Shown: positions 5,261-9,164, counted from the first letter of the stretch. The stretch is 9,616 nt of DNA from IMGVR_UViG_3300005964_000002:1-9616; one strand, 5' to 3'. The notes: generated by a model not told the origin, from the letters alone. Numbers and translations: made by a program.

Positions 5261-6451
5261 ATGGAATTCCAAAGAAAAACTTCAGGAGTTATAAAAAGTT
5301 TTAATTCTCTAGATATTTTTTCAATAAATCTTTTATACATGGGAATTTTAAGCGGTATAAGTTATCCTCTTTTTGTCTCAAGTCTTCTAAAATCTGTAAA
5401 CTTGTTATTTGCAATTTTGATAGGTGCAATTTTTGAAATTCCGCTTTTAGTAATGTATTACACACTAACTAAAAAAATTCCGTTAAACGGAGGCGATTAT
5501 GCGTATATTCGTTCTACATTTTCGCCAAAATTCTATACAATTTTCGGAATTTCACTCTGGCTAATTTACGTATTTTCTGCACCAATATTAGCTGACCTAG
5601 TACTCCTAAATTTCAATATTCCAGTAATTGATAAGTTCTTTATTTCAGAAATGTTATTCGCTATTGCTTTGTTCAGTATAGTTAAAAAGTCAATTTATGC
5701 ATATTTAGTAGACGGATTAGCAATTTTACAAATAATTGTTTCTGTAATTCTGCCAATCTCAAGTTTTCATTTTCAAGTCCAAAATTTCACATTATCAAAC
5801 ACCTTACTTTCAGCTTTACTATTTGATTTGTCTATGTTTTTATTTCTAAATGCAATTAGTTATATTGCAGGGGAAACAAAAAATGTGAATAAAAATATGA
5901 AAATTGGTTATTTCATAAGCTATGTAGTAGTTACCATATTAGCGATATTAGATAGTTATTCGAATCTAAACATATTATTTATGTTAATGCCGATATGGTT
6001 CATGAGTTATATTTTTATAACTACACTAATCCAAAGTCGATTAGTGCAAAATCTTGCATTTGATAAAATCTTACCTGAGAAATTTGCAAAAATATCGCCA
6101 AATGCCTTACTATTGATCTTTATCGGTGATACTATTACAAATATTCTAGAAAATTTGTTAAACTTTTCAATTTCATTTGGATTTGATGGCTTATTATTTA
6201 TTTTCTGGAATTTCATAATTGTTAGTTTTGCATTTCTCAGATTAACCAATAACAAATTGATATTTTCTACTGTATTAATTAGCTTAGCTTTACAAATTTT
6301 CCTATTTTTCTATCTAGGCATGCAAAATCAAGTATTTTATAACTTTGTGATTGAAGGAAACGCAATATATATAATACTAAGGATATTAATAATGCCAATT
6401 ATAGGAGGAATTATTTACTTATTGAGGAGAAAAGTGATAAATGTTGAATAA
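5261..6451 (+). CDS. APC-superfamily (amino acid permease-like) membrane transporter
   Basis: About 11-12 hydrophobic segments; APC signatures IPLNGGDYAYIR, ISYIAGETKN and LAFDKILPEKFAKI; N-terminal FQRKTSGVIK typical of archaeal APC permeases. Confidence 0.9.
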   Translation: MEFQRKTSGVIKSFNSLDIFSINLLYMGILSGISYPLFVSSLLKSVNLLFAILIGAIFEIPLLVMYYTLTKKIPLNGGDYAYIRSTFSPKFYTIFGISLWLIYVFSAPILADLVLLNFNIPVIDKFFISEMLFAIALFSIVKKSIYAYLVDGLAILQIIVSVILPISSFHFQVQNFTLSNTLLSALLFDLSMFLFLNAISYIAGETKNVNKNMKIGYFISYVVVTILAILDSYSNLNILFMLMPIWFMSYIFITTLIQSRLVQNLAFDKILPEKFAKISPNALLLIFIGDTITNILENLLNFSISFGFDGLLFIFWNFIIVSFAFLRLTNNKLIFSTVLISLALQIFLFFYLGMQNQVFYNFVIEGNAIYIILRILIMPIIGGIIYLLRRKVINVE

Positions 6452-6453
6452 AA

Positions 6454-7356
6454 ATGAAATTAATATTTGGATTAAGTTCAAGATCAACTTATCTATTAAA
6501 AACTAATTTTCCAGTTTTAATTAATCAATTGAAATTTAGAAAAAAAGAATGGAAAAATGAGACATGGGTAGATAGTGGAGGCTATCAAATTCTATTACAC
6601 GGTTTAGAAATTTCTGTAAAAGATGTCCTGAAGAAGTACAAAAAGATAGATGCATATGCGTTTTTTTCTCTCGATATTGCTAGCGTTTTTTCTCCTTTGG
6701 ACAAACGAAATTTTGAATATTTTGAATATTTGTACACAAAAATAGAATGGTTAGAAAAAATTATACCAGTGATACATATTTATCCAATTCAAGATATAGA
6801 TGAGGCAATTGATTTTTATAAACAATATACTTATTATTTTTCAATTGGTGGACTTGTGGCATCTAGCAAAATGAAAGTTTTAATTTATACATTTCCATGG
6901 GTTTATTACTTAAGAAAAAAAGTTCCATATCTTCACGTTCTCGGAATGCCGGCACCGTATTTTCTTCAGACGTTCAATTTTGCTAATAGCATGGACACAG
7001 CAACTTACAGTAAAATAACCGGATTTAGAGATATATTTTGGTTTGATGGATCTAGAAGATATGTCGGAAATATGGAAACGAGAAGAAAAAGATGTAAAAT
7101 CACAAAAGAAGAAAAAGAACAATTGTTTGAATTCCTAGATAAACATAATTTTCCTTTTGAATATGACTTGAGCAATAGAAAAATTATAGAACTTATAAAT
7201 GCTTACATTTTATTCTATAATAATTGGAGAATAAAGAATAAATATACAGAATATGCAGAAAAACTTAGAAAAATGGGGCTAGATAATTTAGTAAATGAGT
7301 TAATTAGGAACTATAAATTTGCAAGTCAAATATTAAAACAAAAAAGAGAAAAATAG
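6454..7356 (+). CDS. tRNA-guanine transglycosylase-family protein (TGT/DpdA-like)
   Basis: TGT motifs WVDSGGYQ, FSLDI, IIPVIH, FSIGGLV, LHVLG and NSMDT. Starts 2 nt after the transporter stop. No obvious CxCxxC zinc motif or PUA tRNA-binding extension. Confidence 0.88.
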   Translation: MKLIFGLSSRSTYLLKTNFPVLINQLKFRKKEWKNETWVDSGGYQILLHGLEISVKDVLKKYKKIDAYAFFSLDIASVFSPLDKRNFEYFEYLYTKIEWLEKIIPVIHIYPIQDIDEAIDFYKQYTYYFSIGGLVASSKMKVLIYTFPWVYYLRKKVPYLHVLGMPAPYFLQTFNFANSMDTATYSKITGFRDIFWFDGSRRYVGNMETRRKRCKITKEEKEQLFEFLDKHNFPFEYDLSNRKIIELINAYILFYNNWRIKNKYTEYAEKLRKMGLDNLVNELIRNYKFASQILKQKREK

Positions 7357-7474
7357 ACGATAAAAAATACAATAGTCAATAATTTGTACCAATTTTTAAC
7401 GATTAAAAATCTTAATTCAAATAAGTTATCCACTTTTTGTCACCGAAATAATGAAAAATATAAACTTATAAAAG

Positions 7475-7494
7475 AAAAATTAAAAAGTCAAAAA
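7475..7494 (+). promoter_or_regulatory. GTC-type promoter of the DndC-like gene
   Basis: AAAAATTAAAAAGTCAAAAA; GTC (7487-7489) is followed by 20 nt and then the ATG at 7510. Confidence 0.6.
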
Positions 7495-7509
7495 TAAACC
7501 ATATTTCAT

Positions 7510-8724
7510 ATGTCTCTTAGATTGTCTGAAGATCCCAAAGTTCATGAAACATTCAATGTATTCGATAGCCTGAAGGACAGGAAAAACTATGTCATAGCGT
7601 TTTCAGGCGGAAAAGACTCAACAACACTTTCTATTCTTTTCTATGAATGGTTAATTTCCAGGAATCAGAAGGGAAAGCATGTGTTCTTTGTTCACAATGA
7701 CACCGAGTCGGAATATGATGTTCTAGAGGATTATGCAATCAATTTCCTTCATGAGATCTGTGAAAAGATCAATGAATCGGGTAATCTATGTATAAATTAC
7801 ATTACGAAACCTAAAGGAAACTTTTACTGGAAATCTATATTTTTGGGATATGTAGCACCCACAACTAGTTTCCGCTGGTGTATTTATGACCTGAAGGTCT
7901 CACCAAATAAAAGAAGTTTAAAAAATTTAATTAAAAAATATGGTGACTTAGTACTATTCACAGGTCATAGAGAAAATGAATCGATAGCAAGAAAAGTGAC
8001 AATGAAAAAGTATTCATGTGGATTAGATTCTATGGATTGTGCAAGTGCTTTTTATCTCAATGTCTCAATGAAAAATGTAATTAAAGTGGCACCAATAAGA
8101 AAATGGGATCTTGAAGACGTTTGGAAATATTTAAGATCAAAAAGGGGAGAATTCAACATAGATACATTATTTGATGTAATGTATAAGAATACTAGTTCTA
8201 GATGGGGATGTTGGCATTGCACTCTAGTAAAAGTACAGAAAAGTGTATATAACTTAGACGAAAAATATTTTCCTCTGGAGGCTTTAAGAATACTTTACAG
8301 AACAATATCAGATCTCGAAAGATTCAGATTACGAAAAGATTGGGGATACTCGAAACTAGGCGCCCTATCGCCAAAGGGAAGAGCAATACTCATGTATGGA
8401 ACAAAAGTTATAGAAAATATAGGAATAAAATTGTATGGATTAGACTTCAAATTAGAGGGAACCCATAGCTTAAGAGAAATCATGTTTGAGCTAGATGAGG
8501 ACATAGCAGACAGGGAAGTCATGACCATAGCTAAGGAATTGAAGTCAAAGACTAGTCGTATCATTCCGATAGGTGTGCTTAGAGGACAAAGAATGACCAA
8601 AACGGATGAAGAAGTGATACTTCACATGGCGGAAAGCAATGTTTCCCTTAACGTTTTAAAAATTCATTCTACAAAGGATCATTTCAAGGATCTTGTCCAC
8701 AATATTAGAAATGAGATGAGTTAA
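7510..8724 (+). CDS. dndC: DndC/TdpC-like DNA phosphorothioation sulfurtransferase (PAPS-reductase / PP-loop adenylyltransferase fold, probable Fe-S)
   Basis: PP-loop AFSGGKDST; NDTESE; DndC-typical FYWKSIFLGYVAPTTSFRWCIYDLKVSP; TGHRENESIAR; APIRKWDLEDVWKYL; SRWGCWHCTLV; C-terminal LGALSPKGR. Confidence 0.8.
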   Translation: MSLRLSEDPKVHETFNVFDSLKDRKNYVIAFSGGKDSTTLSILFYEWLISRNQKGKHVFFVHNDTESEYDVLEDYAINFLHEICEKINESGNLCINYITKPKGNFYWKSIFLGYVAPTTSFRWCIYDLKVSPNKRSLKNLIKKYGDLVLFTGHRENESIARKVTMKKYSCGLDSMDCASAFYLNVSMKNVIKVAPIRKWDLEDVWKYLRSKRGEFNIDTLFDVMYKNTSSRWGCWHCTLVKVQKSVYNLDEKYFPLEALRILYRTISDLERFRLRKDWGYSKLGALSPKGRAILMYGTKVIENIGIKLYGLDFKLEGTHSLREIMFELDEDIADREVMTIAKELKSKTSRIIPIGVLRGQRMTKTDEEVILHMAESNVSLNVLKIHSTKDHFKDLVHNIRNEMS

Positions 8725-8990: not shown

Positions 8991-9164
8991 TTAAATCACC
9001 CAGCAATCTTCCATCATTTTCTTTACTTTTCTTTCCGAAATATTTAAAAAATTGGCTATTTGTTGAACTGTGTAGCCCTTTCGGGCTAACTCATGAGCTA
9101 TGCTTATTAAATCGACTTCATCTTGCACGTAATATTTTACGCCTTCAACTTGGACGACTCTCAT
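8991..9164 (-). CDS. 57-aa HTH DNA-binding protein, homolog of SIRV1 ORF56a / SIRV2 gp1
   Basis: Manual translation MRVVQVEGVKYYVQDEVDLISIAHELARKGYTVQQIANFLNISERKVKKMMEDCWVI*. Classic HTH (GYTVQQIANFLNISERKV), closely resembling my recollection of SIRV gp1. Not in the ORF track. Confidence 0.9.
   Translation of the reverse strand: MRVVQVEGVKYYVQDEVDLISIAHELARKGYTVQQIANFLNISERKVKKMMEDCWVI

What the first reader, a model, noticed from the sequence alone, without database searches (positions are those of the whole stretch)
5261..8724. Three co-oriented genes forming a possible dual DNA-modification cassette: transporter, TGT/DpdA-like and DndC-like
Seen: three consecutive + strand genes, two from nucleic-acid modification families. 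Established: viral TGT paralogs (DpdA) exchange DNA guanine for 7-deazaguanine bases and protect against restriction; cellular dpd and dnd islands share components (DpdB resembles DndB). Inference: the virus may carry both base and backbone modification. Alternatively, the PP-loop enzyme acts on the TGT-inserted base by adenylation and thiolation to give an undescribed nucleoside.
Basis: inference. Interest (0 to 1): 0.8.

Follow-up and report, generated by a model that had tools for sequence, protein, structure and literature searches.

The report
Rudivirus DpdA pair plus orphan DndC-like gene
An archaeal rod-shaped virus carries its family's usual transporter plus DNA base-swapping enzyme pair, and next to it a separately acquired sulfur-type DNA-modification gene that looks borrowed from a host defence island, so the two sit side by side without forming one pathway.

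Summary
The three co-oriented genes exist as described, in a Yellowstone Sulfolobus rudivirus contig (~81% nt identity to SIRV8). They are two units, not one cassette.

**Permease + TGT-like pair.** This is an old, near-core rudiviral pair with a 2-nt gap, adjacent in 13/13 Usarudivirus-like loci and present in SIRV1/2/3 and SRV. The TGT-like protein has a TGT fold, keeps the catalytic aspartates, and lacks the zinc site and tRNA-binding domains. It is 38% identical to STSV2_15, and STSV2 DNA contains dCDG. Ligamenvirales DpdA genes were already catalogued in 2019.

**DndC-like gene.** It has PP-loop SGGKDS plus FRWC and CWHC cysteines. It is a lineage-specific insertion: a 153-nt spacer, GC3 0.32 against 0.12–0.22, and absent from every deposited rudivirus. 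It lies inverted relative to TGT in a second rudivirus lineage, and sits alone in at least four other mobile elements without TGT. In all seven cassette-bearing loci its relatives are linked to a PD-(D/E)XK protein and an SF1 helicase, not to DndD/E or TGT. dN/dS is 0.04–0.10.

**Best reading.** It is an orphan, self-protective DNA-backbone modification enzyme, probably making phosphorothioate, captured from an uncharacterised crenarchaeal restriction-like island. Dual modification is plausible. Sequential chemistry on one nucleoside is not supported.

The parts
5261..6451 (+). Rudivirus-specific polytopic membrane permease (APC-like), first gene of the conserved permease/TGT pair
   Evidence: phrog_8289 at E 9e-195; Pfam AA_permease_2 at 20 bits, below cut-off. 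~10-11 hydrophobic segments. Homologs in SIRV1-11, SBRV1, SSRV1, ARV2 and SRV. No close cellular homolog.
6454..7356 (+). Minimal TGT-fold transglycosylase, DpdA-like. D40 (DSGGYQ), D74 (SLD), G132 and D181 (xxDTA) are invariant. No Zn site, no PUA or C-terminal tRNA-binding domains.
   Evidence: phrog_887 at E 2e-65. Alignments A2/A3. Profile vs 1iq8 at E 5.8e-5, aligning D95/D130/D249. AF2 pLDDT 94; all top PDB hits are TGTs. 38% identity to STSV2_15. Starts 2 nt after the permease stop.
7357..7509 (.). 153-nt AT-rich spacer with two T5 runs. Synteny with the SIRVs ends at about 7357.
   Evidence: No bacterial-type terminator or exact TTTAWATA box here.
7510..8724 (+). Orphan DndC-family PP-loop / Fe-S-type enzyme (404 aa). 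Has SGGKDS at 32-37, FRWC at 121-124 and CWHC at 234-237. The last ~70 residues are helical and family-specific.
   Evidence: AF2 pLDDT 88.6. GC3 0.32 vs 0.12-0.22. dN/dS 0.04-0.10. No rudivirus match in the phage collection.
8994..9164 (-). 57-aa HTH protein, probable Aca8 homolog. It marks the anti-defence-rich terminal region that begins right after gene 3.
   Evidence: phrog_7067 at E 9e-27. Homolog in SIRV2 at 1228-1386, two copies per genome. Aca8 = SIRV2 gp01/gp54 per PMC11065993.

Best explanation
The window is the right arm of a Usarudivirus-like Sulfolobus rod-shaped virus. It holds two independent DNA-modification modules that are neighbours by position only.

Module A, the permease plus a minimal TGT-fold enzyme, is an ancestral rudiviral pair. 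The enzyme most likely exchanges guanine in DNA for a 7-deazaguanine-type base, as DpdA does. The co-transcribed permease plausibly supplies the free base. The DNA substrate, the identity of the base and the permease's role are inferred.

Module B, the DndC-like gene, is a recent single-gene acquisition in the variable region between the last core gene and the Aca8/anti-defence terminus. It derives from the modification component of an uncharacterised crenarchaeal island: DndC-like enzyme + PD-(D/E)XK protein + SF1 helicase, sometimes with a Walker-A NTPase, a ~355-aa partner and a second SspD-like PAPS reductase.

The viral enzyme most likely uses its PP-loop to adenylate a DNA backbone phosphate. 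It then transfers sulfur, delivered via its cysteine/Fe-S site from a host cysteine desulfurase, to give phosphorothioate. This marks viral DNA as 'self' and escapes the cognate nuclease-helicase, the way phage orphan methyltransferases work.

Shown: family membership, motif conservation, purifying selection, mobility, and linkage of relatives to nuclease-helicase. Inferred: the chemistry (phosphorothioate), the substrate (viral DNA), and the anti-restriction role.
For: Independence of the modules:
- Permease/TGT are adjacent in 13/13 loci; gene 3 is present in only 2 of them, which are 95% identical.
- No rudivirus in the phage collection has gene 3.
- The 153-nt spacer contrasts with the 2-nt gap, and GC3 is 0.32 vs 0.12-0.22.
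- L119 has gene 3 convergent with TGT.
- 76-81%-identical copies sit on a pRN1-primase element, a bicaudavirus-like contig, and RHH and B116-like contexts without TGT.

Origin of gene 3:
- The mobile copies form one 100/100 clade, sister to Sulfolobales chromosomal copies.
- DndC-like + PD-(D/E)XK + SF1 helicase are linked in Stygiolobus, S. shibatae, L030-32, L033, L120, L127/128 and, in variant form, Pyrobaculum.
- L120, from the same metagenome as the sibling rudivirus contig, carries an 81%-identical copy inside a full cassette.

Enzymology:
- SGGKDS, FRWC and CWHC are invariant.
- hhalign to bacterial DndC gives E 1.3e-68.
- dN/dS is 0.04-0.10 and all motifs are kept in every copy.

Precedents:
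- tdpC alone suffices for phosphorothioation (PMC12914056).
- A phage PAPS reductase counters Dnd (Piel 2022, cited in PMC13551039).

Module A:
- TGT fold and catalytic Asp residues.
- Fold matches to proteins of phages nt-1 and phiST.
- 38% identity to STSV2_15, which lies beside ArcS2, and STSV2 DNA contains dCDG.
- 12 Ligamenvirales were counted as DpdA-encoding viruses (PMC6884629).
Against: - No chemistry was measured, so phosphorothioate is inferred only from family membership.
- Dnd, Ssp and BREX-4 phosphorothioation all need an NTPase partner (PMC12914056), and the virus encodes none in the window. The larger cellular cassettes do contain a Walker-A protein, so the orphan enzyme may be inactive alone or may depend on host partners.
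- Gene 3 scores far below the curated DndC cut-off.
- I could not compare it with TdpC: the paper is not held, and no Tdp-named chain matched by sequence.
- The fold search of the gene 3 model could not be run.
- The restriction role of the helicase/nuclease pair is inferred from domain content only.
- For module A, no 7-deazaguanine synthesis gene lies in the window. Hutinet 2023 report that STSV2's host lacks the pathway, so the base source is unknown.
- The permease-base link rests on gene adjacency alone.
Confidence: 0.55

Rival explanations
1. One pathway, the first reader's alternative: the PP-loop enzyme adenylates and thiolates or amidates the base inserted by the TGT-like enzyme, for example a carboxy-deazaguanine, to give a new nucleoside.
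For: The genes are physically adjacent in the window lineage and in L119. STSV2, which has a homologous TGT, carries dCDG, whose carboxylate is the kind of group PP-loop enzymes such as QueC activate (plus general knowledge).
Against: Gene 3 is DndC/PAPS_reduct family, not QueC family. It occurs without TGT in at least four mobile contexts and all cassette-bearing loci. TGT occurs without gene 3 in all deposited rudiviruses. Orientation is not conserved. Composition differs and the spacer is 153 nt.
Confidence: 0.05
2. Gene 3 counters a host phosphorothioate-type defence without marking viral DNA. It could do so by titrating or poisoning partners of the host enzyme, or by mis-modifying host DNA.
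For: The virus carries only one component of a multi-gene island. The mechanism of the phage PAPS-reductase anti-Dnd effect cited is not given there. Gene 3 lies next to the Aca8/anti-defence terminus.
Against: All catalytic motifs are invariant under strong purifying selection. That argues for retained enzymatic activity and against a decoy.
Confidence: 0.15
3. Gene 3 is an auxiliary sulfur or RNA enzyme (tRNA thiolation of the TtuA/Ncs6 type, or PAPS/APS reduction) that boosts host metabolism or translation during infection.
For: Weak hits to ATP_bind_3, TilS, LarE, CysH and [4Fe-4S] tRNA thiolases.
Against: The best matches by far are DndC models (E 1e-37 vs 1e-5 or weaker). Cassette-borne relatives sit in nuclease/helicase/methyltransferase islands beside integrases and DUF1156 proteins, not with sulfur-assimilation or tRNA genes.
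Confidence: 0.07
4. The TGT-like protein acts on tRNA, as a minimal ArcTGT or as the TGT-like N-terminal module of a split ArcS, and not on DNA. The window would then hold at most one DNA modification.
For: The best structural and profile matches are ArcTGT. In Sulfurisphaera the chromosomal homolog is head-to-head with a DUF5591/ArcS-core gene. Public annotations call it a tRNA-ribosyltransferase.
Against: It lacks the zinc site and all C-terminal tRNA-binding domains of ArcTGT. It keeps both catalytic aspartates. The homologous STSV2 gene pairs with ArcS2 in a virus whose DNA carries dCDG. Phage DpdA-type proteins are its viral fold neighbours.
Confidence: 0.2

Closest known systems
DndC (Dnd phosphorothioation system)
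   Same: PP-loop SGGKDS, FRWC and CxxC cysteines. Homologous over ~330 residues (hhalign E 1.3e-68, 29% identity).
   Different: Scores 122 bits vs the 290-bit cut-off. It is shorter, with a family-specific C-terminal ~70 residues. It is never linked to DndD, DndE or DndB. Control bacterial DndC genes score 390-474 bits and are flanked by DndD or DndA.
TdpC of the thermophile TdpABC system (An et al. 2025, known to me only through citing papers)
   Same: A single PAPS-reductase-type gene sufficient for phosphorothioation, in a three-gene cluster, in extremophiles. The minimal archaeal cassette here also has three genes.
   Different: Sequence or structural relatedness could not be tested. The partners here are an SF1 (Upf1-like) helicase and a PD-(D/E)XK protein, and no Tdp-named PDB chain matched them. 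The Tdp system was reported from bacteria.
Phage-encoded orphan PAPS reductases (anti-Dnd; Piel et al. 2022; Aca-linked examples in PMC13551039)
   Same: A single DndC/SspD-like gene in a variable, anti-defence-rich region of a viral genome, proposed to evade phosphorothioate-based restriction.
   Different: Those are bacteriophages. Here the carrier is a crenarchaeal rudivirus, and the source system is a different, uncharacterised cassette.
Viral DpdA (DpdA1-4), in particular STSV2_15
   Same: TGT fold, catalytic aspartates and no tRNA-binding domains. 38% identity to STSV2_15. Ligamenvirales were already counted as DpdA carriers.
   Different: No hit to Pfam TGT or to DUF6610 (DpdA4). No zinc site. 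No ArcS or preQ0 genes nearby. Uniquely paired with a membrane permease. Rudiviral DNA modification has not, to my knowledge, been measured.
Orphan DNA methyltransferases of phages
   Same: The logic is the same: a virus keeps only the 'M' half of a host restriction-modification system to mark its own DNA.
   Different: The chemistry differs: backbone sulfur, inferred, instead of base methylation.

Membership tests
DndC (TIGR03183 / PADLOC DndC) | PP-loop ATP-pyrophosphatase motif SGGKDS | tested here: met
   Residues 32-37, invariant in 33 family members.
DndC (TIGR03183 / PADLOC DndC) | Conserved cysteines for an Fe-S cluster (RWC ... CxxC) | tested here: met
   C124, C234 and C237 are invariant; C170 and C177 are nearly so. 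This is at sequence level only; cluster binding was not tested.
DndC (TIGR03183 / PADLOC DndC) | Score above the curated family cut-off | tested here: not met
   121.7 bits vs 290.4. Control bacterial DndC proteins score 390-474 bits on the PADLOC models, against 127 bits here.
DndC (TIGR03183 / PADLOC DndC) | Operon partners DndD (ABC-type ATPase) and DndE | tested here: not met
   None in the window, in related mobile loci or in the cassettes. Bacterial controls do have DndD or DndA.
TdpABC (TdpC) | Sequence or structural homology to TdpC | not testable with these tools
   The paper is not held. No Tdp model appeared in NCBIfam or PADLOC hits. The fold search of the gene 3 model was unavailable.
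TdpABC (TdpC) | Three-gene cluster in a thermophile, with a single modification gene | tested here: inconclusive
   The minimal cassette DndC-like + helicase + PD-(D/E)XK occurs in S. shibatae and L030-32. Other loci have extra genes, including a Walker-A protein. Identity of the partners with TdpA/B is unknown.
TGT / DpdA superfamily | TIM-barrel TGT fold | tested here: met
   AF2 pLDDT 94. The top 50 PDB matches are all TGTs, with ArcTGT first at E 7e-9.
TGT / DpdA superfamily | Catalytic aspartates and the base-binding aspartate | tested here: met
   D40, D74 and D181 are invariant and align with ArcTGT D95, D130 and D249.
TGT / DpdA superfamily | Zinc-binding CxCxxC...H subdomain of canonical TGTs | tested here: not met
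   The protein has one cysteine, and there is no conserved Cys or His after D181.
TGT / DpdA superfamily | Pfam TGT (PF01702) or DUF6610 (DpdA4) match | tested here: not met
   No Pfam family at E <= 0.01.
TGT / DpdA superfamily | Acts on DNA, inserting a 7-deazaguanine | not testable with these tools
   Only indirect evidence: homology to STSV2_15 in a virus whose DNA has dCDG.
APC-superfamily permease | Pfam AA_permease_2 above the gathering score; 10-12 TM helices | tested here: inconclusive
   20 bits vs 27. A few close homologs carry precomputed PF13520. ~10-11 hydrophobic segments.

The most novel reading that the evidence does not exclude
The two modules meet on the same DNA. The rudivirus would carry a 7-deazaguanine base and a sulfur modification at once. 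The DndC-like enzyme, working as a single protein without an NTPase, would either phosphorothioate deazaguanine-containing sites or thiolate the inserted base itself, giving a nucleoside or dinucleotide not yet described. The lineage-specific placement next to the DpdA gene would then be more than coincidence.
Probability: 0.05. Interest if true: 0.85.

Novelty: new member of a known kind. Interest (0 to 1): 0.45.

Why it matters
If the best reading holds, three things follow. First, a model archaeal virus family offers a natural pair of near-isogenic lineages, with and without an orphan DndC-like gene, for testing whether archaeal viruses use backbone modification as anti-restriction. Second, the analysis points to an uncharacterised DndC-like/PD-(D/E)XK/SF1-helicase island in Sulfolobales and Thermoproteales as a candidate modification-dependent defence system. 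Third, the conserved permease-DpdA pair is a candidate answer to a question Hutinet et al. 2023 left open: where Sulfolobus viruses get their 7-deazaguanine when the host lacks the pathway. All three are testable in laboratory Sulfolobus strains with SIRV2-type viruses. The finding as originally framed, a dual-modification cassette, is weaker than it looked.

Tried and rejected
- Direct PDB sequence searches with genes 2 and 3 gave nothing. Only family profiles worked.
- The 309-aa upstream core protein is not a second TGT.
- The genome-contig scan with the family alignment was swamped by generic bacterial DndC and did not return the Sulfolobales relatives. I reused it only as a DndC control.
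- Thermus contig L112 was too fragmented to use as a possible Tdp bridge.
- The SIRV early-promoter core TTTAWATA is not upstream of gene 3, and its count in the window is at chance level.
- The bacterial-type promoter/terminator scan and the repeat search around gene 3 gave nothing above chance and no insertion-site repeats.
- PADLOC and NCBIfam gave no names for the ~470, ~590 and ~355-aa cassette proteins.
- PDB sequence searches with the cassette helicase and nuclease found only generic Upf1-like helicases.
- The 325-aa neighbour of the Sulfurisphaera TGT-like gene is unrelated to the viral permease.
- The primary Tdp paper is not held.
- A look-up of Acidianus homolog P0119 found no record.
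Full report
**What the window is**

The 9,616-base window is IMG/VR contig 3300005964_000002. It aligns at about 81% nucleotide identity with Sulfolobus islandicus rod-shaped viruses 8, 10, 9, 11 and 4, all Usarudivirus from Yellowstone. The alignment runs from position 18 to about 7357 and resumes near 9000 in terminal-region sequence. Upstream of the finding lie the usual rudiviral genes: a SAM methyltransferase, a 309-aa core protein, a 201-aa protein and a GT1 glycosyltransferase. The host context is therefore a hyperthermophilic crenarchaeon and the virus is a linear dsDNA rudivirus.

**Observation**

The three + strand ORFs exist exactly as stated.

Gene 1 (5261-6451) is a polytopic membrane protein:
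- It matches phrog_8289 at E 9e-195.
- Its Pfam AA_permease_2 hit is sub-threshold.
- It has roughly 10-11 hydrophobic segments.

Gene 2 (6454-7356) has no Pfam, NCBIfam or direct PDB sequence match, but other evidence places it:
- It matches phrog_887 'queuine tRNA-ribosyltransferase' at E 2e-65.
- A profile of its family hits Pyrococcus ArcTGT (1iq8) at E 5.8e-5, and weakly the Salmonella DNA-guanine transglycosylase 7ui4.
- Its AlphaFold model (pLDDT 94.1) returns only tRNA-guanine transglycosylases among the best 50 PDB matches.

Gene 3 (7510-8724) belongs to the DndC/PAPS-reductase family:
- It matches PAPS_reduct at E 3e-14 and PADLOC DndC at E 1.6e-37.
- Its NCBIfam DndC score is 121.7 bits, against a cut-off of 290.4.
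- Profile against profile, it is homologous to bacterial DndC over residues 4-331 (probability 100%, E 1.3e-68, 29% identity).

**The permease/TGT pair is old and tight**

- The permease stop and the TGT start are 2 nt apart.
- tblastn over all fetched rudiviral loci finds the two genes adjacent in 13 of 13 loci.
- In the deposited phage collection the permease is present in SIRV1-11, SBRV1, SSRV1, ARV2 and SRV. The TGT-like gene is present in SIRV1-11, SBRV1 and SRV.
- Bautista et al. 2017 list a tRNA-guanine transglycosylase among the SIRV core clusters (PMC5454432).
- Outside rudiviruses the permease has no close cellular homolog at the sensitivity used.

**What the TGT-like protein is**

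An alignment of 30 family members (25-81% identity) shows invariant D40 in DSGGYQ, D74 in SLD, G132, the H161-x-L163-G164 motif and D181 in xxDTA. In the HMMER alignment, D40, D74 and D181 fall on ArcTGT D95, D130 and D249, which are the two catalytic aspartates and the base-binding aspartate. The numbering was read from that alignment; the roles come from established TGT enzymology.

The protein has a single cysteine, and the family has no conserved Cys or His that could form the TGT zinc site. At 300 residues it also lacks the C-terminal tRNA-binding domains.

It is 38% identical (E 1e-51) to STSV1, STSV2 and STSV4 proteins. The STSV2 homolog, STSV2_15, overlaps the start of STSV2_16. Hutinet et al. 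2023 identify STSV2_16 as ArcS2, state that STSV2 encodes DpdA and ArcS, and measured dCDG at 0.04% of G in STSV2 DNA (PMC10516641).

A chromosomal homolog in Sulfurisphaera lies head-to-head with a DUF5591 (ArcS-core) gene. In the viral structure library the nearest non-rudiviral neighbours are phage TGT/DpdA-type proteins, including proteins of Vibrio phage nt-1 and Cellulophaga phage phiST. Hutinet et al. 2019 already counted 12 Ligamenvirales among DpdA-encoding viruses (PMC6884629).

The DpdA reading is therefore reasonable and is not new. It has not been tested for rudiviruses, and the family matches neither Pfam TGT nor DUF6610/DpdA4. The base used and the permease's role are inferences. 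The permease is a candidate supplier of the base, which would address the open question in Hutinet 2023 about the source of 7-deazaguanine in Sulfolobus viruses.

**Gene 3 is a separate, recently acquired unit**

1. Synteny with every deposited rudivirus stops at about 7357 and resumes near 9000. tblastn with gene 3 finds no rudivirus in the phage collection.
2. A 153-nt AT-rich spacer with two T5 runs separates it from the TGT gene.
3. Its GC3 is 0.32, against 0.12-0.22 for all nine core genes in the window.
4. In IMG/VR only one other contig, 95-97% identical and so the same lineage, has both genes. The metagenome scan adds short contigs of that same lineage.
5. That scan also adds L119, a second rudivirus lineage (TGT 89% identical, gene 3 84% identical). 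There gene 3 lies on the opposite strand, convergent with the TGT gene, and pieces of the window's downstream flank are rearranged around it.
6. Copies 76-81% identical occur without any TGT or permease in four other contexts:
   - a contig with a pRN1-type primase and ThyX (L002);
   - a bicaudavirus-like contig (L006);
   - contigs with RHH proteins (L007);
   - contigs with B116-like proteins (L009).
7. Immediately downstream begins the terminal region with a 57-aa HTH protein. Its SIRV2 homolog lies at 1228-1386 and occurs twice per genome, matching Aca8 (gp01/gp54) of PMC11065993. That region is described there as rich in early anti-defence genes.

**Where gene 3 comes from**

A maximum-likelihood tree puts the seven mobile-element copies in one 100/100 clade, sister to Sulfolobales chromosomal copies.

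Every cassette-borne relative examined lies beside a PD-(D/E)XK protein of ~620-690 aa and an SF1 (AAA_11/AAA_12, Upf1-like) helicase of ~520-540 aa:
- Stygiolobus caldivivus, Saccharolobus shibatae, and metagenomic loci L030-32 and L033;
- the most divergent member, on L127/128, there with a methyltransferase;
- in variant form, Pyrobaculum ferrireducens.

Three loci add further genes: a ~590-aa protein with a conserved Walker A motif, a ~355-aa protein, a ~470-aa protein and a second, SspD-like PAPS reductase. None of these partners matches DndD, DndE, SspB/C, BrxC or any named defence protein. Control bacterial DndC genes, by contrast, are flanked by DndD or DndA.

L120 comes from the same metagenome as the sibling rudiviral contig. 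It carries a gene 3 homolog 81% identical to the window's inside such a full cassette. Its DNA is GC-rich (0.47) and synonymous sites are saturated, so the transfer is not very recent. The exhaustive profile search finds only about two dozen 50%-identity clusters that match over the full length. Beyond that the family grades into the wider DndC-like superfamily.

**Is the viral copy functional?**

SGGKDS, FRWC and GCWHC are present in all eight mobile copies compared. Pairwise dN/dS against the window copy is 0.04-0.10. The AF2 model is confident (pLDDT 88.6), apart from the loop at 168-179 that carries the two nearly invariant cysteines.

**Mechanism**

Established knowledge of DndC describes an Fe-S protein with ATP-pyrophosphatase activity that is essential for phosphorothioation (PMC8569181). 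Citing papers report that tdpC alone suffices for phosphorothioation, through an adenylated DNA intermediate (PMC12914056, citing An et al. 2025).

On that basis the most likely action has three steps:
1. PP-loop-dependent adenylation of a backbone phosphate.
2. Sulfur transfer from a host cysteine-desulfurase-fed cysteine/Fe-S site.
3. The resulting phosphorothioate marks viral DNA as 'self' for the cognate nuclease-helicase.

Precedents exist for a phage PAPS reductase countering Dnd, and for PAPS reductases in Aca-controlled anti-defence loci (PMC13551039).

There is a caveat. Dnd, Ssp and BREX-4 all require an NTPase partner, and the virus has none in the window. The enzyme must therefore either be self-sufficient like TdpC or borrow host partners. 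I could not test relatedness to TdpC.

The observation and the family calls are right. 'Both base and backbone modification' remains plausible, as two independent systems. 'Cassette' and 'PP-loop enzyme acts on the TGT-inserted base' are not supported by distribution, orientation, composition or the contexts of relatives.

Novelty is modest:
- The DpdA-like gene and its permease partner are known annotations.
- Orphan PAPS reductases are known in phages.
- New here are the presence of such a gene in a rudivirus lineage, its spread among Sulfolobales mobile elements, and the conserved DndC-like/PD-(D/E)XK/SF1-helicase island it appears to come from.

Noticed in passing
L003:8494-19379; L033:5654-15891; L120:264-9475; L005:10001-14594; L030:8001-12662; L127:2254-11194: A conserved crenarchaeal island: DndC-like gene + PD-(D/E)XK protein (~620-690 aa) + SF1 helicase (~520-540 aa). 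Some loci add a Walker-A protein (~590 aa, A-x-Y-G-R-G-K-T), a ~355-aa protein, a ~470-aa protein and an SspD-like second PAPS reductase. The partners match no PADLOC, NCBIfam or PDB entry by name. It is a candidate modification-dependent defence system.
   Followed up: partly
window:8994-9164 (- strand): A 57-aa HTH protein (phrog_7067, mislabelled 'terminase small subunit' in RefSeq SIRVs). Its SIRV2 homolog lies at 1228-1386 and occurs twice per genome, consistent with Aca8 (gp01/gp54). A TTTAAATA box at 9048-9041 precedes the next minus-strand ORF, which starts at 9006.
   Followed up: partly
L126:7397-8885: In a Sulfurisphaera chromosome the TGT-like homolog (37% identical) lies head-to-head with a 182-aa DUF5591 (ArcS core) gene. 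This mirrors STSV2_15/STSV2_16. The pair could be a split ArcS-like or a cellular DpdA/ArcS2 module.
   Followed up: no
window:88-780 and 829-1470: Two ORFs of 230 and 213 aa both match different parts of phrog_10791 (511-position profile) and phrog_14297. SIRV8 has one 511-aa gene (gp45) at this position. The gene may be split or strongly diverged in this lineage.
   Followed up: no
window:4824-5243 (- strand): A 139-aa protein divergent from the permease, with weak ParB-C-terminal and FtsK-gamma (winged-helix) matches. It is only 39-50% identical among Usarudivirus-like loci, although both flanking genes are 80-88% identical.
   Followed up: no
L120, L002, L009 (whole loci): Contigs carrying 76-81%-identical copies of gene 3 have GC 0.47-0.50, against 0.27 for the rudivirus. 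The gene family has crossed between mobile elements of hosts with very different base composition.
   Followed up: no
L118 and L031 (both metagenome Ga0208683); L117 and L120 (both Ga0081474): Rudivirus contigs carrying gene 3 and contigs carrying the DndC-like/helicase/nuclease cassette come from the same hot-spring metagenomes, so virus and candidate target system coexist.
   Followed up: no
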